NCBI GenBank assembly: GCA_965235115.1
Contig: OZ249445.1
Coordinates: 18,476,001-18,540,000, forward strand
Length of the DNA: 64,000 nt
Direction of reading: 5' to 3'
Source of the DNA: Laetmonice hystrix
Taxonomy: Eukaryota
Of this stretch, positions 24,048 through 36,694 are shown in pieces. Each line of letters begins with the position of its first letter. Positions within the stretch are counted from its first letter, which is position 1. The translations under genes and the position numbers were made by a program. The notes beneath the pieces were generated by a model that did no database searches, was not told where the DNA came from, and saw only the letters and a list, made by a program, of their open reading frames with translations.

Positions 24048-27000
24048 GTATGCCAATAATAACACAGGCTTCTGGTTTATAATTAACGATGCACAAATCA
24101 AATAGAAGTGCATTTAACACATGCGGAGGTGCGAACGCCGCCTTCTACTTTTGCCAGTTTTAGTTTAGACAAGGTTTCAGCATTTTGACATCACAGGCGA
24201 CAGGGATGTGCATTTCCCAATCCAAGCATTGCTATCATACCATTTTCATGTAGAAAAAAGTTTAAAAAAGAATAGACCTGCAATGTTAAGTATTTCTTCT
24301 TCTAGGTTGGGGCAAGTCAAGGGGATGGTTACATGAATTCAAAGGCCCGTTCTCCCCATACAACGCATGAGAAGTTTGAAGGGATAACTGTAGTTAAGGC
24401 AGCACAGGTGAGTTTTTATTCACATTTAAATGTCATCAAGTAGAATGTAGGCTTATTGTTTCACAATGTTGCCTGGAAGACATAAACTAATAAGTCAAAA
24501 GTTTTTCTCTGTCATGTCGAACATTTAAAATTGACATGTACCTCTATAAATGTAGCTCGCCAGGGAAGGAGTGATAACGGAGGAATTGGCTGAACTCTAT
24601 CTGAAGATTAGTAACAGGGCAAAGCTGTTCTCAGAACACTACTGGAACCTCCAGACTCCGCTCTACTTTCATTATACACACCTTGTCTGTAGAACAGCAC
24701 TTGATGGTAAGTACTGCCTTTGAACCGCCAGTTTCCAAGTAAGGCCCAAGGGACATTTTTGGTATATTTGATATATTGTTGGTAACATCCCACACATGGA
24801 CTTTGCTAATCCTAGGACATATATCATAAGTGATAAACACAAATGTATCAAGAGAAAAGTCTCTAGATTTTGTTGAATTTTCTTTTAATTAATAGATTTG
24901 TACCCCTCTTTCAAAGCTAGCTGATAAGTTAACCTCAGTAGATTATTAATATTTAAAAAATGTATCTACATTGTATATAGTGGAGAAGATTTATTTTTAT
25001 TTTTAGTGAAGTTGGTTTGTAATATGTGTCTTGTATTTTATATGGTGTCTTCCCCCCCCCCAACTGGTTTTGCTCTTGTACATTATTTTGATTCTATGAA
25101 GACAGGAGCAAAGCACACAGAAAATTGCAAAAAAAACCCAAATAGGTGAAACTCAGATCTCTTACCTATGGTCTTACTTACAGTATTACAATCTCTTCTC
25201 TTGGCCCCTGAGATAGAGCCCCCAGACTTAGCTTTGAACCTAATGAAAAGGTTTGTCATGTTGTTGAGTTTGTTAGGTGTATCATGTAGATACATGAGGT
25301 CTGAAGATGATCATAGAGTATGATCTATGCAATGTATCAGTTATGGCCATGGTCATAAATCACATACTCGCAGTTCCAACGTATGCCACTATTTCTATCT
25401 ACTCTTACATTTGCATGTTGCTTCTTATTTTGCTTCATTCAATCAAGTCCTTACAAGCACATCCATGAAGGTCCTACAAGTTTTATTTTACTATTTTGTA
25501 TGGTGTATGGGATTTAATAATAAAAGAGTGTTTTCAGGGAAAATTTGTGTAGCCTCTTCAGTCTAGATAGTTTAAAGATTGAACTCTAGATTCACTGAGA
25601 TTTCGTTGTTAACTCCCTTGTTATCTGGATTTGTCTCTCTTTGCTATCAGTACTATAGAGAAATACTTTCTTCCCACTACTTGTCTTTAGATAGGGCTTA
25701 TTTGCCGCTTGAATTTTACTGCTAGAAGTGTCCCTGCCACAACCTGTCAATAGTGAAAAAAAACACCAGAGTGTGATTATGAGACTGTCTTTATGAGTAA
25801 CATGAAACGTTAGACGGTGTTGTTTGTCTCTGCCTTTCAATATTTATTATTTTAAAGGTGCTATTCGTGAACAAAAATTCGATTTTTTTATTTTTAATTT
25901 TGTTGACGTTTATGTGATCCCACCTGTCATGGAAATAGATTCACAACAAAGGAAATCAAAATTTTTCATGGATAACGGCACAAATGGGGCTCTCACAGAA
26001 GGCCTGTGGAGACCCTGACACGCACCACCATAGGAAATGGCTCTATCTCGGTGCGCACCGAGATAAGTTTCAAATGCTGCACTCAAACTAATAGAAGGTT
26101 TATCAGGCCAATGGTATCGGTAGGAATTTTTTCTAGTACTATGTGCACAATGTATGATAGGAGAAATGCCATTCTGTGCGAGACGAATAGCACCTTTAAT
26201 AGGGAACAATTTTGGAAATTTAATATATTTGTTTCTTATGAATTGTGAAAGCGTTGCATGTTGTATTATGAATGTATTGTGTATAATTGGTTCCGGCTTC
26301 ATTCACTTGGTCTGTGTCCCAGTGTGACAGTGTGGCTTGATGATGTATACAATAAATTTTTATTACCAGGCCAGAACCTGCGAAAAGACCTCAGTCACCC
26401 AATCCATGCAGATAACTGCATCCTGAACCGTGAAAGTGGCACCTGCCTTCGCCGAGCTCCTGCCTACACCGAGCGAGACTTCAGGTAGCCTTCCATTTAT
26501 TAATGTTTCAAAGACTTGGTGTTTGAAAACCCTTGTTTTCTGACCCTGACAGAGAAGGAGGACCCAGGGAATTGCTTTGCTGACACTGAGGGCCAGGTGT
26601 TGTGTTTCGATCCTGAGACGGTGAAGATTGACACTGAGGGGGACATGTCGTGAGTTAACACAAGTCAGCATGTTCGGCACCCCCTACCCCCCCCCCCCCC
26701 CTACGTCAGCCATCACTTTCCCTTTCCCGTCATGCCTGCGCTCTCTTAGATTAACACACCACCTAGGTTGTATGTTTATGTAACTTGCAGGTCAATGATA
26801 CTGGCACATTTGACTTGTTTTCTTACAATCCTGAGTATTTGGTTCACAGTATTCAGTGATAAGATTTCCTCTCCTAAAAGTTTCTCGTCGTTCTGAGTTC
26901 TATAGAAATGCATTATCTTATTTCATAAGGCAGGTTCTAATATTCCTTATGGTCTAAGAAACAGAAATGGAGGTATTATTTGCCCTTAACAGACTTATGT

Positions 27001-30000
27001 GCATGTACGTGTTTGTGAAGTCCATGACATGTTTCATCAACATCATATGGTGTGTATTGTTACATGGATCTATGCACAGAACACCAGTTTTTGATGAGCA
27101 CCACATCCCTACATCTCCTACTGTGCCGCAGCTGATACTGAATTGTGTGCTACATTAGGGTCGCTCGTGCTTTCTGAAGAAATGAGTTTAAAATAGATGT
27201 TAGGTGAATTGGCTTTAGTAGGTTAGGTAGGTCGTGAACATATGGAATGGATCCTTTGTATTGCCAACCTGGGGGGCAGAAAATGACCATTGAACGATAG
27301 CTTTCCAGCTGAAGATGTCATTTCTTTTTTGAAATGAGCAGGTTTTTTGGGTACCTCTTTGGAATGCCTTTTAAAGAAAGATTAATCTGTACGAATCTAC
27401 CATGAGGCCCATTCTCCTTTTGAGGGAATACTGTAAGTAAGTATTTGATTTGGGGAGACAGTATGTATAGCATCCCCTTTTTTTAAAAGGCGACAGCCTC
27501 ATATGCATGCAGGTCCGCTAGTTAGCTGGAAGTTGAAGTAGATACCTCGTATGTGTTAATATTCTAAAACAAGTACTGTCAAACGTTGAGATAATCATAA
27601 GATATCCCAGGACTACCATATTTTGAGGAAGCCTGGTTGAAGATGGTACACTAGTATTTTACTTTAGCCAATGCCTTAAGTTTAAATGAAGCTTTTGTAA
27701 CTAACAACGACTAACGTTCGATGTAAGACGTGGTGACACAGGCAACATTAAAGTCATAAATGTGTCATCATGTACTTCATAAAGAAGCACAGTGTCCCTG
27801 CAAGGAAGCAACATAATATGCTGTATTAAACGAGGTGCTGGGCATGTAACATCTGAAGTACTTAGTGATTGTTGCAAGACGCCTGTATGTAGTGTATTAT
27901 AGTGTATAACACTATAGATATCGTGTGTGGTATAATGTTCTCATATTAATCACATGTTCTTAACCTCTCTGCTTTAGTGCTCTACTCTACCTGAATGGAG
28001 ATTTTGAAGGAGGAGATTTCTTCTTTGCGCACAGAAATCTTTCTGTCCATGTGAGTAACCTTACACGTTAACATCCTAAGTACAGAACATTGAAAAAAAA
28101 GATAATACTAGTTACATATTTCTCTTTCCAATTATACCAAGAAACTATGATTCCGGTCACTAATGATCGAACAGCATGTTGTAAGACAACGTGTCTGAGG
28201 CGCCCTTGTCTATTTATATCCGTTTGGTTTCCAGAAAAAACTCCACCCCAAGTGTGGCCGGATGGTAGCGTTTGAGGCTGGCCATTACCACGGAGTGGAG
28301 GCAGTGAAGAAGGGACGAAGGTGTGCCGTGGCCCTGTGGTTCACACTGAGTGAATATGATGCTGAAACCAACCGTCGCGAGGCAGAGTCGATCCTTCGCA
28401 GTTTGAGCGTCATGAAAAAGTGGGTTGTTGCCCACCGTGGTTTTATATAGGCCTAGATCATAATGTATGGCAGGAATGTGCTAACTTCAGCAGTGACCAG
28501 GCTTGATATTGTGGATTTTAGTCAGAGCTTTAAAAGTTGTAAAAATAAGGAAGACATGTATGAGTCAGTTCGTAGTTTCTTTTTGACAGTGTGGTTTGTA
28601 CACAGTAATTTGCGGTATGGCAATGCTAATGCAGACTGCCATTCAACTACCGTACTTTTATAAAAAGTCGAAATTTTCGAAAGAACGGGTAACTAACTGA
28701 GCCTCGTGTTTATTATCAGTAGCCATTCCACCATCTCAGTGCTTCAATACGGGTGTTTGTGTTTAAAGGATGGAAAATGATCTCCTTCGTAATCTACTGG
28801 AGAAACATGACATCCGCATCATTAGAACGGAGAATGAGCTCGATGGGCCGGAGAGGTTCGCAGCTGATGGCCTCGTGACCAAATCAGAGTGTGACAAACT
28901 CATCCAGCTTGCAAATGTAAGTTACGAAATTATGCGAGTCTGGTTTAAACAAAAGTACTTATGGTATTTTGATTTAAGGGGTAAAGGGAGTTTGGAGTCG
29001 AGGAAATAACGGATCGCTATTGCTAGAATAGATTATTACTTGTGATGTCTTGTGTACTGATATAGTGTGTTGGCTTTGTCTGTTTGAAATTCGTTATTAT
29101 GGCCAAGGATAATATACCTACATTATCCTTGTTATGGTTTTGAAGTGTTGATGTTAGCAAGGCCCAACGTTAAATGTTCTGACTGAGGTATCACTGAACA
29201 GTGAATCATACCTCAATGTCCTTTCTTGTCTTCTGCGTCTTACACATCTTAATAATAACCACTGTTCCCGTGGGCCCCGAGTTATATGATGTAGTCCAGT
29301 ATGTAGTACAGTAATACAGTGTAGTACGTTGACATATTGCTAATGTCAGGAGGGCGGCCAGGTCGGGGATGGCTATATGTCAACAAGAACATCACAGCAA
29401 CTGTCACCTCACACTCGCCACGAAAAGTTCGCCGCTCTCACCGTCAAGAAGGCCGCCGAGGTCAGGCGCCACTAGATGGCAGCACTTTGATCTTTTTCAG
29501 TGTAACCAATCATCACTAGGGGGCAGCACCTAACCACACGTGCACTGTTTACGTCTGCTTGTTTATCGGGTGTGTTGCTGTTTCAGCCGTTTGCTATTTA
29601 CTGACCCTGATCGGTGTTGGTTGACCTGACAACATTCCTCCGTCGAAACCGAAAACTCTACGAAATCACACAGCTGTTATGTGTGATTGAAATAGAGAAG
29701 AAAATGATAAAATGAGAGATATCACTTCAACCACAACTCAACCCGCATTGAGCCCTTGCAGTCTGTCAGACTGTTCAAGTGATCGGCAGTGATGTTTTGT
29801 AGAGTGGAGTGATATTTCTACACCCCAGTTTTAGTACATTGATGTTGTGGTTATTAGTGCTGACGGGTTTTCTTTCAGTTGGGTGGCGGTGCTATGTCTT
29901 GACACCTGTAACACGTTTACCTAGATGTAGATAGTACTACAGTATAACAGGAGGAAGTTCCAGTCGGACACAAGTATTGGTTTGATGGATGTTGGCTCAA

Positions 30001-33000
30001 AACTCTCTTTATCCATTCCTACTTCACAAGGTCTTTGGTTCTGTGCTCTTTCTACTTCAGGAAGCCTCTAGTTCTGCCCTTTCAGACATGTACAGGTAAA
30101 ACGGATCAAGTCTACTTGAATATACTTGCAAGGTTCTTGTTTTGAAATAGAAAAGGAAACTGATTTTTATTTGGGTCAATTATTTGGCCTAAGTTCTTGT
30201 TACGGAAAAAATTATTATAGTAATAACTAGAGATAAAATGTCATGAAAAGTTTGAAAGGCAGCAAGGACCTTGCTTGTATTTGCTAGTGTAGACTCAGTG
30301 ATCATACAATATTTTATGAAGGTATCCCTGCAAGATTATTAACACTGTACATTGTAAGGATACATCAAACTGGAAACTGTGTTAGCTAGAGGGTGATTTA
30401 ACATTTTATTTCCCATATGTAAGTGTTAAAAAAGTCATTGGAAGTATTATGTTTGAAATTGAAACTAGAGGTTGCTGAAAACACCTGATGTCTCTAAAGC
30501 TGACACATTTTCAGTGATCATTATAAATAATTGTTCCTACCTGACTCGAACCTTAGGATGGGTGTAAGCAAGTAGCGTGGAAGCTCAGCCCGGCTGACTT
30601 GATAAGGTAACACCTTGTACAATAACTGTGTAACGGGAGTCAAGGATACGCAACTCTTAGTCTGGTGTGGTTGTGTTTGCTCCCGACCAGGCTGGTGGAT
30701 TAGAAGGTGATGGGTATAAGACGAAAGGCAAGCAAGGATCACCTCATACAAGTCACGAAATGTTTGAGGGTCTAACAATCATCAGGGCTACCCAGGTTGG
30801 TCATGCATGGACCCCCTTCCTCCACTGCCACCCCGCATCCATAACACCCCAACCACCCGTCCCTCTTAGACACTTCATGTTAAAATGTTCACTCTAGTAT
30901 TAAGTTTCTTGGGTTGCTTCATGTTTATAATGTCTTAGTATGGGGTGCTTGATATTTTCCTTGAAATTATATCGAATTCTGTATTTTAGAAGTTTGGTTC
31001 TTAAAATAAAAGCAGGTACTGTAAATAATTCTATGAACCCCAGGAAAGAATGAAATACTGATGGCGACCTGTTTATATGTTTGTATATGTCGTCATAGTA
31101 TAGATCATTATATGCTATTAAAGTATTCTAAATTAGCTAATCTTAATAGGCTGATAGGTATCAGCGTTGTTAATATAATAACCATGTGACTATTCGTAGC
31201 CATTTACAACGCCCCTCTTTCTAGTTAGTTAGTTTTAATTGATAGAGCAACTTAATATAAGCTTTAGAGATACTGTATTGATCGTGAACAATATGTGTTG
31301 TAAAGATATCTTTTAGCTCGCTAGTATATGCTTTAGATAGAATATATAGTTATGGGAGTAGTTGGATAGGTTGTAAACCGTCCATGTCTCATAACACAGA
31401 AGGTAACGAGGATCGGACAGTCATACAGATATTCTAGTAATTAAACATAAAGTCTTTCTACATGATGAATCACAAGACGTTTTTTACGTTTGTACCCGAA
31501 CAGTTTACTGCGTGTGTAGGTCAAAGGTCTAGAATTTAGCATTTGAGAAATGACCAAAAAATATATATACGGGAAATATGAATCATTTAATAAGTGGCAT
31601 AAAATTGGACTTGACATAGTAATGGAATGCATACTGAATGCGTTGTTGACTGAAGACGGCCATGTACGATTACAGTTGGCTGCAGCAGGTAAAGTTGACG
31701 TGGAAGCCGTCGAGTTATATCTGGAGATAGCCGAGAAAGGGCGCCATCTGACGGCGACCTACTTTAACCTGAAGACTCCACTCTACTTTGATTTCACACA
31801 TCTCGTCTGCCGTACAGCACTAGGGGGTAAGTTGGTACCTGCAGTAAACGGTTCGCTGCTATCAAGTTCTCTCTTAAAATAAATGCCAGGAATGAAGAGG
31901 GATGGTGCATGGTCGTGGAGTCAACGTAAAGAAAAAAACAATGCTTCTAGTGAAGGTATTCAGAGGGAAAGTTTAGGTGAGGAAAGATTTTAGGTCCCAA
32001 ATCATTGAGATATTATATGGTTTGCAGTGCCGGGGGTATTTGACATTGGCGTAGATAGGATATGTTTAAAAGTTTGATGGAGGTAGTGTAGAAGTGTTAA
32101 CTGTTTAGAGATATTATATAGTTTGCAGTGCCGGGGGTATTTGACACTGGCGTAGATAGGATATGTTTAACAGATTGATGGAGGTAGTGTAGAAGTGTTA
32201 ACTGTTTAGAGATATTATATAGTTTGCAGTGCCGGGGGTATTTGACACTGGCGTAGATAGGATATGTTTAAAATTTTGATGGAGGTAGTGTAGAAGTGTT
32301 AACTGTTTAGAGATGTGACTTATCGTTGTTTGAATGATTCAGACGAAGGGACCCTGAGAACTGACCTCAGTCACCCAGTACACTCTGACAACTGTATACT
32401 ACAGAACGACGGCACCTGTCTCCGACAGGCCCCAGCCTACGTCCAGCGGGACTACAGGTACACGGCCATAACTTCTGGCTTAAGTTTGGGGAAACTGGCC
32501 ACAGAGCTCTTGGTAACAGTTCACATAAGGTGGAAAACCCCTTCAAGCTGATAATTTTCTAACACTTTTTCTTGATGTCATATAGAGTCAATAAGCACTA
32601 GTCAAGTAAAGATGAAAGTTCACCCCAAAAATTGTCGTGTGTTTCAGTGCTATCATCTACCTAAACGGAGACTTCAGGGGTGGAGAATTTTTCTTTGCAC
32701 ATCCTAATCGGACAGTTCAGGTGAGAAAGCTAAGCCAATCGAATGGAATTCTATGACTCTTGTGGATACGCTATATTTGAGACATTTATTGTTGGTCCAC
32801 TCCAGACCATGAAATGTTTCAACTGTGTTGAAGCTGTCATATTTTGTTGATGTGAAAAATGTAGCCCTACTTGCCCTTGCACAAATACCAAACATCGGAT
32901 TAGTTTGTAAGATTGGTGTCCTGTGATGACCAAGCTGCGATCAAACAATAGTGAAATATCACTAGTGGTGATCTTATTCTGGCAATTTCTGCTTATAGTC

Positions 33001-36000: not shown

Positions 36001-36694
36001 TTAACAAAACATGATGTTGTGGCGCCAGGCCCCCGGTTTCAGAAAGGGTCGAAGCAGCAAGCTTGAAGTTAAGCAGTGCTACGGTGGCCCACGAGGACAA
36101 CATACACTTTGATTTTCATGGATATTTTCATGGCAGTGGAAATATCAGGGCGGTGAAAATATTGCCACCATGGTTAAATTATTATCACTGTGAAAATATC
36201 GATGAAAATCAATCTAGAAAGTTAGAAACACTAAAGGTATATATGTCCTTATGGGCTGCTGTAGCTCTGCTCAGCTTAAGCTTGCTGCTTAGATCCTTTC
36301 TGAAACTAGGGCCAGGAGACGAAATACATCAGTGCATGATCCTACAGCGTGTACACCCAGCTTGTTTAGCTCTGTTTTGTTGGCATATAACTCTTGGCTC
36401 CTTAGGTTCCATGAAAGTTCTAGGAGGAGACTTACTTCATAGTTACCATTATATTAACTTCAATGTTATGTTTGTTTCTTTTTTCAGAATGAGTTGAAGC
36501 CCAAAGCTGGGATGATGGTAAGCTTCAATGCCAGTAACCTACATGGGGTGAAGGCCGTCAAGAAGGGCCAGCGGTGTGCTATTGCTCTGTGGTTTACTTT
36601 GAATAAGAAATTTAAAGAGAGAGCACATTTAATTGCCAAGAAGGTGGTAGAGGACGTGAGGGAGCGACGCCGTCATCGGCACAGTGAACTGTGA
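23835..36694 (+). CDS. P3H: Prolyl 3-hydroxylase (P3H/leprecan family), multi-exon gene encoding two tandem 2OG-Fe(II) dioxygenase domains with C-terminal HSEL (about 545 aa plus an unlocated signal-peptide exon)
   Basis: Exons translate to P3H hallmark motifs twice (GDGY..SPHT.HEKFEG, PLYF..THLVCRTAL, SHP(I/V)HxDNC, RD(F/Y)SA..YLNGDF.GG, HGV.AV..G.RCA..LWFTL), with GT-AG boundaries and consistent phases. The two domains have matching exon sizes (151, 115, 73 bp). Confidence 0.9.
24306..24407 (+). CDS. P3H: P3H domain 1, exon B1 (VGASQGDGYMNSKARSPHTTHEKFEGITVVKAAQ)
   Basis: TCTAG| ... |GTGAGT, 102 bp, phase 0-0. Confidence 0.92.
24556..24706 (+). CDS. P3H: P3H domain 1, exon C1 (LAREG...TPLYFHYTHLVCRTALD)
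   Basis: TGTAG| ... |GTAAGT, 151 bp, phase 0-1. Confidence 0.92.
25856..26195. mobile_element. MITE with 13-bp TIRs (AGGTGCTATTCGT) and TTAA TSD, Kolobok-like
   Basis: TTAA|AGGTGCTATTCGT ... ACGAATAGCACCT|TTAA; internal perfect palindrome TATCTCGGTGCGCACCGAGATA. Superfamily inferred from the TTAA TSD and purine termini. Confidence 0.7.
26370..26484 (+). CDS. P3H: P3H domain 1, exon D1 with the HAD iron-binding motif (GQNLRKDLSHPIHADNCILNRESGTCLRRAPAYTERDF)
   Basis: TACCAG| ... |GTAGCC, 115 bp, phase 1-2. Confidence 0.93.
26553..26649 (+). CDS. Candidate alternative exon D1' (EKEDPGNCFADTEGQVLCFDPETVKIDTEGDMS), diverged exon-D copy lacking HxD
   Basis: CTGACAG| ... |GTGAGT, 97 bp, same phases (1-2) as D1, open in frame, and shares the NC..C..TE.D.S pattern with D1. 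Confidence 0.5.
27978..28050 (+). CDS. P3H: P3H domain 1, exon E1 (SALLYLNGDFEGGDFFFAHRNLSVH)
   Basis: CTTTAG| ... |GTGAGT, 73 bp, phase 2-0. Confidence 0.93.
28235..28419 (+). CDS. P3H: P3H domain 1, exon F1 (KKLHPKCGRMVAFEAGHYHGVEAVKKGRRCAVALWFTL...SVMKK); read-through would stop at 28450
   Basis: TTCCAG| acceptor; an internal donor |GTGGGT at 28420 joins exon A2 in frame (AA|G = Lys). Confidence 0.88.
28769..28916 (+). CDS. P3H: P3H domain 2, exon A2 (MENDLLRNLLEK...RFAADGLVTKSECDKLIQLAN)
   Basis: TTTAAAG| ... |GTAAGT, 148 bp, phase 2-0; homologous to A1. Confidence 0.88.
29350..29460 (+). CDS. P3H: P3H domain 2, alternative exon B2 (EGGQVGDGYMSTRTSQQLSPHTRHEKFAALTVKKAAE)
   Basis: GTCAG| ... 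|GTCAGG, 111 bp, phase 0-0; carries the GDGY..SPHT.HEKF motif. Confidence 0.8.
29469..29529 (+). promoter_or_regulatory. Pair of CTCF-like motifs (CCACTAGATGGCAGCAC, CACTAGGGGGCAGCAC) flanking a CCAAT box
   Basis: Close match to the CTCF core consensus; lies 8 bp after the exon B2 donor. Confidence 0.5.
30691..30795 (+). CDS. P3H: P3H domain 2, alternative exon B3 (AGGLEGDGYKTKGKQGSPHTSHEMFEGLTIIRATQ)
   Basis: ACCAG| ... |GTTGGT, 105 bp, phase 0-0. Confidence 0.85.
31676..31826 (+). CDS. P3H: P3H domain 2, exon C2 (LAAAGKVD...TPLYFDFTHLVCRTALG)
   Basis: TTACAG| ... |GTAAGT, 151 bp, phase 0-1. Confidence 0.92.
32007..32314. repeat. Intronic tandem repeat, 101-bp unit, 3 copies
   Basis: GAGATATTAT starts at 32007, 32108 and 32209. 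Confidence 0.9.
32343..32457 (+). CDS. P3H: P3H domain 2, exon D2 with the HSD motif (DEGTLRTDLSHPVHSDNCILQNDGTCLRQAPAYVQRDY)
   Basis: TTCAG| ... |GTACAC, 115 bp, phase 1-2. Confidence 0.93.
32648..32720 (+). CDS. P3H: P3H domain 2, exon E2 (SAIIYLNGDFRGGEFFFAHPNRTVQ)
   Basis: TTTCAG| ... |GTGAGA, 73 bp, phase 2-0. Confidence 0.93.
33516..33734 (+). CDS. P3H: P3H domain 2, alternative terminal exon F2 (TILKPYRG...LHGVLPVLSGQRCAVTAWYTL...TYAHSEL*)
   Basis: TTACAG| acceptor, phase 0; distal His and 2OG-binding Arg present; ends in HSEL. Confidence 0.85.
   Translation, partial: TILKPYRGLIVSFEAGNLHGVLPVLSGQRCAVTAWYTLNPNFNEANWSHALKVLSDIKRLKATTRTYAHSEL
33943..34069. mobile_element. Degenerate hairpin MITE (PIF/Harbinger-like termini CGGGTTTTT...AAAAACCCG)
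   Basis: Arms of about 57 bp are imperfect reverse complements around a short loop. Confidence 0.55.
36029..36312. mobile_element. MITE with about 55-bp TIRs and a possible CAG TSD (PIF/Harbinger-like)
   Basis: GCCCCCGGTTTCAGAAAGGGTCGAAGCAGCAAGCTTGAAG... pairs with ...CTTAAGCTTGCTGCTTAGATCCTTTCTGAAACTAGGGC; CAG flanks both sides. Confidence 0.7.
36488..36694 (+). CDS. P3H: P3H domain 2, alternative terminal exon F3 (NELKPKAG...LHGVKAVKKGQRCAIALWFTL...RRRHRHSEL*)
   Basis: TTTCAG| acceptor, phase 0; near-canonical P3H motif HGVKAV..GQRCAIALWFTL; ends in HSEL. Confidence 0.9.
   Translation, partial: NELKPKAGMMVSFNASNLHGVKAVKKGQRCAIALWFTLNKKFKERAHLIAKKVVEDVRERRRHRHSEL

What the first reader, a model, noticed from the sequence alone, without database searches (positions are those of the whole stretch)
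26553..26649. Cryptic duplicate of the iron-binding exon that deletes the HxD motif: a splice switch to a dead domain 1
Seen: 68 nt after exon D1 lies an AG...GTGAGT-bounded 97-nt segment with the same phases (1-2), open in frame. Its product E-KEDPGNCFADTEGQVLCFDPETVKIDTEGDM-S aligns to the second half of D1 (DNCILNRESGTCLRRAPAYTERDFS; shared NC, second C, TE.D.S) but lacks SHPIHAD. D1 plus D1' together is out of frame and hits a stop, so they would be mutually exclusive. Inference: inclusion would give a catalytically dead but possibly substrate-binding domain 1, acting as a pseudoenzyme or chaperone module, analogous to non-catalytic CRTAP in the vertebrate P3H1 complex.
Basis: partly seen in the sequence, partly recalled or inferred. 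Interest (0 to 1): 0.75.

Follow-up and report, generated by a model that had tools for sequence, protein, structure and literature searches.

The report
Probable alternative iron-site exon, prolyl 3-hydroxylase
A 97-base segment next to the iron-binding exon of a worm collagen prolyl 3-hydroxylase gene has the features of a real, swappable coding exon that would switch off one of the enzyme's two catalytic domains, but no RNA data exist to show that it is used.

Summary
26553-26649 is a 97-nt segment bounded by AG and GTGAGT. It has the same phases as the HxD exon D1 (26370-26484) and is open in that phase. Including both exons, or neither, gives an early stop.

It is unlikely to be a chance open frame:
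- Splice-site pairs this strong occur about once per 15 kb of non-exon sequence here.
- Its codon usage is as coding-like as the real exons, and in one frame only. None of 1045 open intronic windows reach its score, and only 0.46% of composition-matched shuffles do.
- It is a GC island (0.54 against 0.39 for the intron) and is single-copy in the genome.

Descent from D1 is only moderately supported. The pairwise protein match is not significant. Two tests do support it: a profile of the naturally HxD-less domain-1 exons of molluscs (p about 0.0015), and the last 21 nt, which match D1's end in register with the donor (p about 0.002).

Domain 1 has lost HxD for good in molluscs, a nemertean, a leech and Dimorphilus. 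It keeps HxD in Capitella, Paralvinella and Lingula. So a dead domain 1 is biologically plausible.

Untested: expression and mutual exclusivity (no RNA runs), and conservation in close relatives (none available). Five distant relatives lack the exon pair. The CRTAP analogy is loose.

The parts
24306..24407 (+). Exon B1 of catalytic domain 1 (GDGY...SPHT motif exon)
   Evidence: Bounded by AG and GTGAGT and in frame with C1. tblastn hits to spiralian P3H proteins.
24556..24706 (+). Exon C1. It ends in phase 1, leaving one G for the next codon. It is the upstream splice partner of either D1 or D1'.
   Evidence: Donor GTAAGT.
25852..26199 (.). High-copy dispersed repeat inside intron C1-D1. It is context only and not part of the exon pair.
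   Evidence: Summed contig depth is about 10^5 against about 30-55 for the flanks, with many loose ends at 25851/26199.
26370..26484 (+). Exon D1: the iron-binding (HxD) exon of domain 1. 115 nt, phases 1->2, weak donor GTAGCC.
   Evidence: 67 bits to a profile of the D exon. The only variant seen in the DNA runs, 26470 C>T, is synonymous.
26485..26552 (+). 68-nt spacer between D1 and D1'. It carries the pyrimidine tract and a CTGAC branch-point-like motif (A at 26543), and starts with an in-frame TAG.
   Evidence: Read. The TAG at the D1 donor rules out an exon extension.
26553..26649 (+). D1': candidate alternative exon. 97 nt, phases 1->2, open in frame, no HxD, two Cys, acidic.
   Evidence: Single copy in the genome.
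26581..26604 (+). First copy of an internal 24-nt direct repeat (spacing 48 nt, in frame). It encodes the first DTEG.
26629..26652 (+). Second copy of the internal repeat (79% identical). It spans the D1' 3' end and its donor. This part also matches the 3' end of D1 in register.
26650..26655 (+). Consensus donor GTGAGT of D1'
27978..28050 (+). Exon E1 (LYLNGDFEGG...). It is the downstream splice partner of D1 or D1', and its first T completes the Ser codon.
28235..28447 (+). Exon F1 of domain 1, with the distal His and the 2-oxoglutarate-binding Arg (HGV...RRC). These residues are kept in both isoforms.
   Evidence: PF13640, 27.1 bits. P3H1 structure 8k0e, E=6.7e-11. Acceptor read.

Best explanation
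26553-26649 is a real coding exon, most likely an old and strongly diverged tandem copy of D1. D1 is the iron-binding exon of the first dioxygenase domain of a spiralian two-domain prolyl 3-hydroxylase.

Shown here: D1 and D1' have the same phases and lengths of 1 mod 3. Only transcripts with exactly one of them stay in frame, and both or neither gives an early stop. The D1' form lacks the His and Asp iron ligands but keeps the distal His and the Arg in exon F1.

Inferred: the two exons are used as either/or alternatives, and out-of-frame products are removed by nonsense-mediated decay. The D1 form gives a domain 1 with the full His-x-Asp...His iron site. The D1' form gives a non-catalytic domain 1 of the same kind that molluscs, a nemertean, a leech and Dimorphilus carry permanently. 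The D1' form probably acts as a binding or scaffolding module beside the active domain 2.
For: Splice signals and frame:
- At D1' thresholds (pyrimidine tract >=0.7, GTRAGT donor, 50-200 nt) the window has only 8 pairs on the + strand and 5 on the - strand.
- Two of the + strand pairs are the real exons B1 and E1, and a third (28740-28916) ends at the donor I assign to exon A2. About 8-9 are decoys, roughly 1 per 15 kb.
- A frame-preserving decoy in the 3.1 kb flanking D1 is expected about 0.01-0.02 times.
- D1' ranks first of 128 frame-preserving AG..GT candidates in those introns.

Coding structure:
- The codon log-odds is 0.49 bits per codon in frame, against -0.04 and -0.63 in the other frames. 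Real exons score 0.07-0.54.
- 0 of 1045 open 31-codon intronic windows reach this score. 0.46% of open mononucleotide shuffles reach it.
- GC by codon position is 0.58/0.35/0.68, against 0.58/0.41/0.57 for the exons. GC is 0.54, against 0.39 for the intron.

Family resemblance:
- A profile built from 13 HxD-less domain-1 exon products, 11 from named species (10 molluscs and Helobdella) and 2 from records without a species name, with no window sequence included, scores D1' at 7.4-9.4 bits.
- That equals the score of the true homologue D1. In the window's six-frame set only D2 scores higher. 0.15% of 20000 composition-preserving shuffles reach it.
- The last 21 nt match D1's last 21 nt at 12 positions, in register with the donor (9 of 4434 controls).

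Exon architecture: the dead D exons of the oyster (94 nt) and abalone (85 nt) have the same 1->2 phases.

Precedent: domain 1 lacks HxD in molluscs, Lineus, Helobdella and Dimorphilus, and the mollusc and leech sequences aligned here also keep the distal His and Arg.

Other: the segment is single-copy. Only 5 decoy pairs at these thresholds lie on the - strand and none is in this interval, so nothing exon-like overlaps it on that strand. No Rfam match.
Against: - There is no RNA evidence. No RNA run holds the locus, and the three runs that were laid are genomic DNA.
- The pair is absent from every relative whose locus could be read. Capitella and Lingula have only the active exon, in introns of 52-285 nt. 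The oyster, abalone and Helobdella have only a dead exon.
- NCBI isoform sets of the oysters, abalone, scallop and Lingula never vary at the D exon.
- Pairwise similarity of D1 and D1' is not significant. The active-D profile gives p=0.056.
- The internal 24-nt repeat means the DTEG that aligns to the conserved QEDG motif could be a secondary copy of the exon's own 3' end.
- The splice-site thresholds were set after seeing D1'.
- No polymorphism lies within D1', so there is no test of constraint.
Confidence: 0.55

Rival explanations
1. Relic of an exon duplication. D1' arose as a tandem copy of D1 (or of its 3' end and donor) and was once or recently coding, but is now unused and drifting. Its open frame and splice sites have simply not decayed yet.
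For: The pair is absent from all relatives examined. The internal microduplication fits the local junction duplications that other notes report in this window (s1-356055, s1-356056). There is no expression evidence.
Against: Divergence from D1 is deep: pairwise similarity is not significant, and the DNA is recognisable only at the 3' end. Yet the frame, both splice sites and the frame-specific codon usage are intact. An unused copy that old should have lost them.
Confidence: 0.2
2. Poison or regulatory cassette exon. D1' is spliced in together with D1, which shifts the frame and gives a stop after 9 codons. Its role would be to lower the level of productive mRNA, not to encode protein.
For: Joint inclusion gives an early stop. 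The D1' splice sites are stronger than those of D1. The only plausible branch point (A at 26543) lies 58 nt from the D1 donor, so the 68-nt spacer looks spliceable and joint inclusion is not sterically blocked (read; the inference is mine).
Against: A poison exon needs neither an open frame in the replacement phase, nor coding-type codon periodicity, nor resemblance to the D-exon family. D1' has all three.
Confidence: 0.1
3. Chance pseudo-exon. An intronic open frame that happens to lie between an AG and a GTGAGT, with no coding history.
For: Introns hold many AG..GT open segments: 128 frame-preserving ones in the two flanking introns. Pairwise similarity to D1 is not significant. One unrelated place in the window (about 11.7 kb) scores 7.2 bits against the dead-exon profile.
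Against: Four roughly independent tests each give p between <0.001 and 0.02: splice pair and frame, codon structure, profile similarity and the 3'-end register match.
Confidence: 0.08

Closest known systems
Mutually exclusive exons made by tandem exon duplication, kept exclusive by reading-frame incompatibility and nonsense-mediated decay
   Same: Adjacent exons in one gene with identical phases and similar length (97 against 115 nt). Exactly one must be included to keep the frame. Other notes of this scan report such cassettes elsewhere in this genome (s1-349210, s1-327597).
   Different: Sequence similarity between the two exons is far lower than in typical pairs. The alternative removes catalytic residues instead of tuning them. 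Use of the exon is not shown.
HxD-less first dioxygenase domain of the two-domain prolyl 3-hydroxylases of molluscs, Lineus, Helobdella and Dimorphilus (NCBI 'prolyl 3-hydroxylase 1/2-like' models)
   Same: Same position in the protein (domain 1). Same exon, with the same 1->2 phases and a similar length (85-101 nt). Loss of the His-x-Asp block. A C-x(5,6)-G-x(1,3)-C motif followed by an acidic stretch. The mollusc and leech sequences aligned here also keep the distal His and Arg.
   Different: In those animals the dead exon is the only one. Here it sits beside an intact active exon. Shared descent of D1' with the mollusc exon is not established. It would require several losses, because Capitella, Paralvinella and Lingula have only the active form.
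Vertebrate P3H1-CRTAP-cyclophilin B complex (PDB 8k0e and related entries)
   Same: A catalytic P3H works together with a non-catalytic relative. The window's F1 exon matches the P3H1 catalytic domain.
   Different: To my knowledge CRTAP corresponds to the N-terminal helical domain only and has no dioxygenase fold. A 208-aa Lingula 'cartilage-associated protein-like' record listed fits that. The D1' isoform would keep the dioxygenase fold and lose only the metal ligands, and it would act in cis within one polypeptide.

Membership tests
Prolyl 3-hydroxylase / leprecan (2OG-Fe(II) oxygenase) | 2OG-Fe(II) oxygenase domain recognised by Pfam, and similarity to a solved P3H | tested here: met
   PF13640: F1 27.1 bits and F3 27.0 bits, against a cut-off of 27. 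P3H1 chain 8k0e_A, E=6.7e-11.
Prolyl 3-hydroxylase / leprecan (2OG-Fe(II) oxygenase) | His-x-Asp...His iron triad plus the 2-oxoglutarate-binding Arg | tested here: met
   Met with D1: HAD in D1, then HGV and RRC in F1. With D1' the His-x-Asp is absent, so that isoform fails this feature by design.
Prolyl 3-hydroxylase / leprecan (2OG-Fe(II) oxygenase) | N-terminal leprecan-type helical (TPR) domain in the same gene | tested here: inconclusive
   Four exon-sized PF23557 matches lie on the same strand at C11:18389238-18418465, and weaker matches reach 18438576. That is 37-87 kb upstream of the window. Joining into one transcript is not shown.
Mutually exclusive exon pair | Neighbouring exons with the same splice phases and similar length | tested here: met
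   68 nt apart, both with phases 1->2, 115 and 97 nt.
Mutually exclusive exon pair | Detectable sequence homology between the two exons | tested here: inconclusive
   Pairwise protein p=0.22 and 0.09. DNA local match p about 0.014. Active-D profile p=0.056 and HxD-less profile p=0.0015. 3'-end register match p about 0.002.
Mutually exclusive exon pair | Including both or neither destroys the reading frame | tested here: met
   Both: stop after 9 codons of D1'. Neither: stop after 5 codons.
Mutually exclusive exon pair | Transcripts contain exactly one of the two exons | not testable with these tools
   No RNA run holds the locus. The runs that were laid are genomic contigs.
Spiralian HxD-less P3H domain 1 | The domain-1 D exon lacks His-x-Asp, while the distal His and Arg are kept | tested here: met
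   The D1' translation has no HxD. F1 is shared by both isoforms. Compare the oyster, abalone, scallop and leech alignments.
Spiralian HxD-less P3H domain 1 | Orthology of D1' with the mollusc dead exon (shared descent) | tested here: inconclusive
   The profile score equals that of D1 itself. No examined genome has both exon types. The internal repeat clouds the motif match.
CRTAP-like non-catalytic partner | Consists of the N-terminal helical domain only, with no dioxygenase domain | tested here: not met
   The D1' isoform keeps exons B1, C1, E1 and F1 of the dioxygenase domain.

The most novel reading that the evidence does not exclude
The D1/D1' pair is an ancestral spiralian splice switch between a live and a dead first dioxygenase domain. 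On this reading, this worm still has both exons. Molluscs, nemerteans and some annelids fixed the dead exon, while Capitella, Paralvinella and Lingula fixed the live one. D1' would then be the orthologue of the mollusc dead exon and a surviving intermediate in the birth of a pseudoenzyme domain.
Probability: 0.1. Interest if true: 0.8.

Novelty: new variant of a known kind. Interest (0 to 1): 0.6.

Why it matters
If D1' is used, one gene makes two forms of a collagen-modifying enzyme. One form has two live dioxygenase domains. The other has a first domain that can no longer bind iron. Several spiralian lineages have made that loss permanent, so the dead domain probably has a function of its own, such as holding substrate or acting as a chaperone or scaffold.

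This animal would allow the two states to be compared in one genetic background. It would also be a clear case of alternative splicing toggling catalytic competence by swapping the metal-ligand exon.

Two full-text searches found no paper on two-domain spiralian prolyl 3-hydroxylases or on such a switch.

Tried and rejected
- RNA evidence: the look-up of sequencing runs returned only three DNA-like runs of one sample. Laying them gave genomic contigs, no junctions and no variant inside D1'. This says nothing about expression or constraint.
- Protein database search with the 49-aa open frame: blank. This is uninformative, because not even the genome's own sequence is in the collection.
- Repeat or transposon origin: rejected. 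The DNA and the peptide are single-copy in the 627-Mb genome.
- Non-coding RNA in the D1 introns: no Rfam match.
- Exon extension by read-through of the D1 donor: rejected. There is an in-frame TAG at the donor.
- Relic of the downstream E/F exons: a tblastn read-through alignment to vertebrate P3H3 suggested this. A profile of E+F scores the region at -1.5 bits, so I rejected it.
- Steric exclusion as the mechanism: not supported. The only plausible branch point lies 58 nt from the D1 donor (my reading), so exclusivity would rest on the frame and on decay.
- A hidden partner exon in relatives: none in the oyster, abalone, Lingula, Capitella or Helobdella loci.
- Structure prediction of the D1' isoform: not attempted.

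Full report
**What is there**

The window comes from a 627-Mb, 35-contig genome. Other notes of this scan call it annelid-like. Positions 23.8-36.7 kb on the + strand hold two tandem sets of exons for the catalytic domain of a prolyl 3-hydroxylase (P3H, leprecan family).
- Exon F1 reaches the Pfam cut-off for 2OG-FeII_Oxy_3.
- F1 matches human P3H1 structures at E=6.7e-11.
- tblastn with spiralian P3H proteins lays out exons A-F twice, plus a third terminal exon.
- B1 (24306-24407), C1 (24556-24706), D1 (26370-26484) and E1 (27978-28050) join in frame.
- D1 encodes the SHPIHAD iron-binding motif and has a weak donor, GTAGCC.
- Leprecan-type N-terminal exons lie on the same strand 37-87 kb upstream of the window, and no separate domain was found in between.
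- So the window's domain 1 sits where domain 1 sits in the roughly 900-1000-residue spiralian proteins.

**The observation**

It is exactly as described.
- 68 nt after D1 lies 26553-26649, 97 nt long.
- It follows a pyrimidine-rich acceptor and is followed by GTGAGT.
- It is open in the same genomic frame and with the same 1->2 phases as D1.
- Replacing D1 by D1' keeps the frame. Using both gives a stop after 9 codons, and using neither gives a stop after 5.
- D1' has no His-x-Asp.

**Is it more than chance?**

Four roughly independent tests say yes.
1. Splice signals and frame.
   - At the strength of D1' (pyrimidine tract >=0.7, GTRAGT donor, 50-200 nt apart) the whole window has 8 pairs on the + strand and 5 on the - strand.
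   - Two of the + strand pairs are the real exons B1 and E1. A third (28740-28916) ends at 28916, the donor I assign to exon A2.
   - That leaves about one decoy per 15 kb.
   - A decoy that also has the right length class and the right open frame, within the 3.1 kb flanking D1, is expected about 0.01-0.02 times.
   - D1' ranks first of the 128 frame-preserving AG..GT candidates there.
   - The thresholds were set after seeing D1', so this figure is on the generous side.
2. Codon structure.
   - I trained a codon log-odds score on about 1000 codons of the window's exons against its introns.
   - D1' scores 0.49 bits per codon in frame, and -0.04 and -0.63 in the other two frames.
   - That is the pattern of the real exons.
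   - None of 1045 stop-free 31-codon intronic windows reach it.
   - Only 0.46% of open shuffles with the same base composition reach it.
   - GC by codon position and overall GC (0.54 against 0.39 for the intron) are exon-like.
3. Copy number and other features.
   - It is single-copy, so it is not a transposon fragment.
   - No RNA family matches.
4. Family resemblance, described next.

**Is it a copy of D1?**

Pairwise tests fail.
- Protein local alignment: p=0.22.
- A profile of active D exons: p=0.056.

The picture changed when I compared domain 1 across Spiralia.
- In abalone, oysters, scallop, mussel, clams and sea slugs, the exon homologous to D1 in the first domain has lost the roughly 10 residues that carry His-x-Asp. 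It keeps a C-x5-G-x-C motif followed by an acidic stretch.
- In Helobdella, Lineus and Dimorphilus the homologous stretch has also lost His-x-Asp, though in Helobdella and Lineus by substitution at a similar length, and the mollusc motif is less clear there.
- The oyster exon is 94 nt and the abalone exon 85 nt, both with phases 1->2. The Helobdella exon is about 101 nt.
- I built a profile from 13 such sequences with no window sequence included. It scores D1' at 7.4-9.4 bits.
- That is the same as the true homologue D1. Only D2 scores higher among about 6400 six-frame pieces of the window. One unrelated place scores 7.2 bits.
- Only 0.15% of 20000 composition-preserving shuffles of D1' reach its score.

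Separately, the last 21 nt of D1' match the last 21 nt of D1 at 12 positions, in register with the donor. Only 9 of 4434 control 21-mers do as well.

One caveat applies. D1' contains a 24-nt direct repeat (26581-26604 and 26629-26652, 79% identical, 48 nt apart, in frame). The first DTEG, which aligns to the conserved QEDG, may therefore be a secondary copy of the exon's own 3' end.

I rate descent from the D exon as likely but not proven.

**Relatives**

No relative has both exon types.
- Capitella has only an active D1, with flanking introns of about 52 and 64 nt.
- Lingula has only active D exons, and its 285- and 243-nt flanking introns are closed in all frames.
- Paralvinella keeps an HxD.
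- The oyster, abalone and Helobdella loci hold one dead and one active D exon and nothing else D-like.
- NCBI isoform sets of the oysters, abalone and Lingula differ at the duplicated B exons of domain 2, and scallop isoforms at the N-terminus and the same B-exon region. None differs at the D exon.
- All these species are only about 45-57% identical to the window's protein. Absence there does not speak against a lineage-specific exon.
- No closer relative was found in the protein collections.

**Expression**

It could not be tested. No RNA run holds the locus. The three runs that were laid are genomic. They show one synonymous variant in D1 (26470 C>T) and none in D1', at a background of about 1%. 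Zero variants in 97 nt is not informative.

**Mechanism**

Shown:
- The frame logic: exactly one of the two exons must be included.
- D1' lacks the His and Asp ligands.
- The distal His and the Arg in F1 are kept in both forms.
- Several spiralian lineages have an HxD-less domain 1 as their only form.

Inferred:
- D1' is spliced in place of D1 in some transcripts.
- Out-of-frame products are removed by nonsense-mediated decay.
- The resulting domain 1 is a non-catalytic binding or scaffold module.

A steric block is not evident. The only plausible branch point (CTGAC, A at 26543) lies 58 nt from the D1 donor. The weak D1 donor next to a strong D1' exon argues that D1' is either used or selected against. 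Its intact state therefore favours use.

**Rivals**
- An unused relic (0.2).
- A poison exon included together with D1 (0.1).
- Pure chance (0.08).

**Comparison and novelty**

This works like a frame-enforced, mutually exclusive exon pair. Its product would resemble the dead first domain of other spiralian P3H proteins. CRTAP is a poor analogue because it has no dioxygenase fold. Two full-text searches found nothing on two-domain spiralian P3H or on such a switch.

I class it as a new variant of a known kind. Interest is 0.6, limited by the lack of transcript and close-relative evidence.

Noticed in passing
window:25852-26199: A roughly 350-nt element in intron C1-D1 is extremely high-copy. 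Summed contig depth is about 10^5 against 30-55 for the flanks, with dozens of divergent contigs and loose ends at both edges. It is probably a SINE-like or satellite repeat.
   Followed up: no
window:29353-29463 and 30694-30801: The two B-exon copies of domain 2 correspond to annotated alternative exons in oysters, abalone and Lingula: 32-aa and 35-39-aa cassettes, present in both, either or neither isoform. The duplication is therefore old. In relatives it is modelled as independent cassettes, not as strictly exclusive exons.
   Followed up: partly
G000:C11:18389238-18438576 (37-87 kb upstream of the window start): Leprecan-type N-terminal (PF23557) exons lie on the same strand. If they are joined to the window's exons, the gene spans at least 123 kb, with an intron of about 60 kb before exon A1.
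   Followed up: partly
L005, L006, L012, L013, L014 and proteins P0231, P0241, P0253, P0151, P0002, P0275, P0281, P0264: Two-dioxygenase-domain P3H proteins are general in Spiralia. Domain 1 has lost His-x-Asp in molluscs, Lineus, Helobdella and Dimorphilus, by a deletion in molluscs and by substitutions in the leech and the nemertean. Capitella, Paralvinella, Lingula and a marine metatranscriptome protein (P0001) keep it. This looks like repeated, independent loss of activity in one domain.
   Followed up: partly
window:28235-28450 and 28767-28916: The F1 reading frame runs on to a TAG at 28448-28450. The next exon (A2) begins with a possible ATG just after its acceptor. Whether domains 1 and 2 are one polypeptide here is not shown. 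Capitella, Lingula and the molluscs join them.
   Followed up: no
window:33513-33731 and 36476-36691: Of the two terminal exons that end in HSEL, the distal one (F3) matches the domain-2 terminal exon of most relatives better than the proximal one (F2). For example, it scores 75.5 against 54.3 bits with abalone P0004.
   Followed up: no
window:26684-26702: A poly-C tract lies just downstream of the D1' donor, with a T>C difference at 26702 between runs.
   Followed up: no
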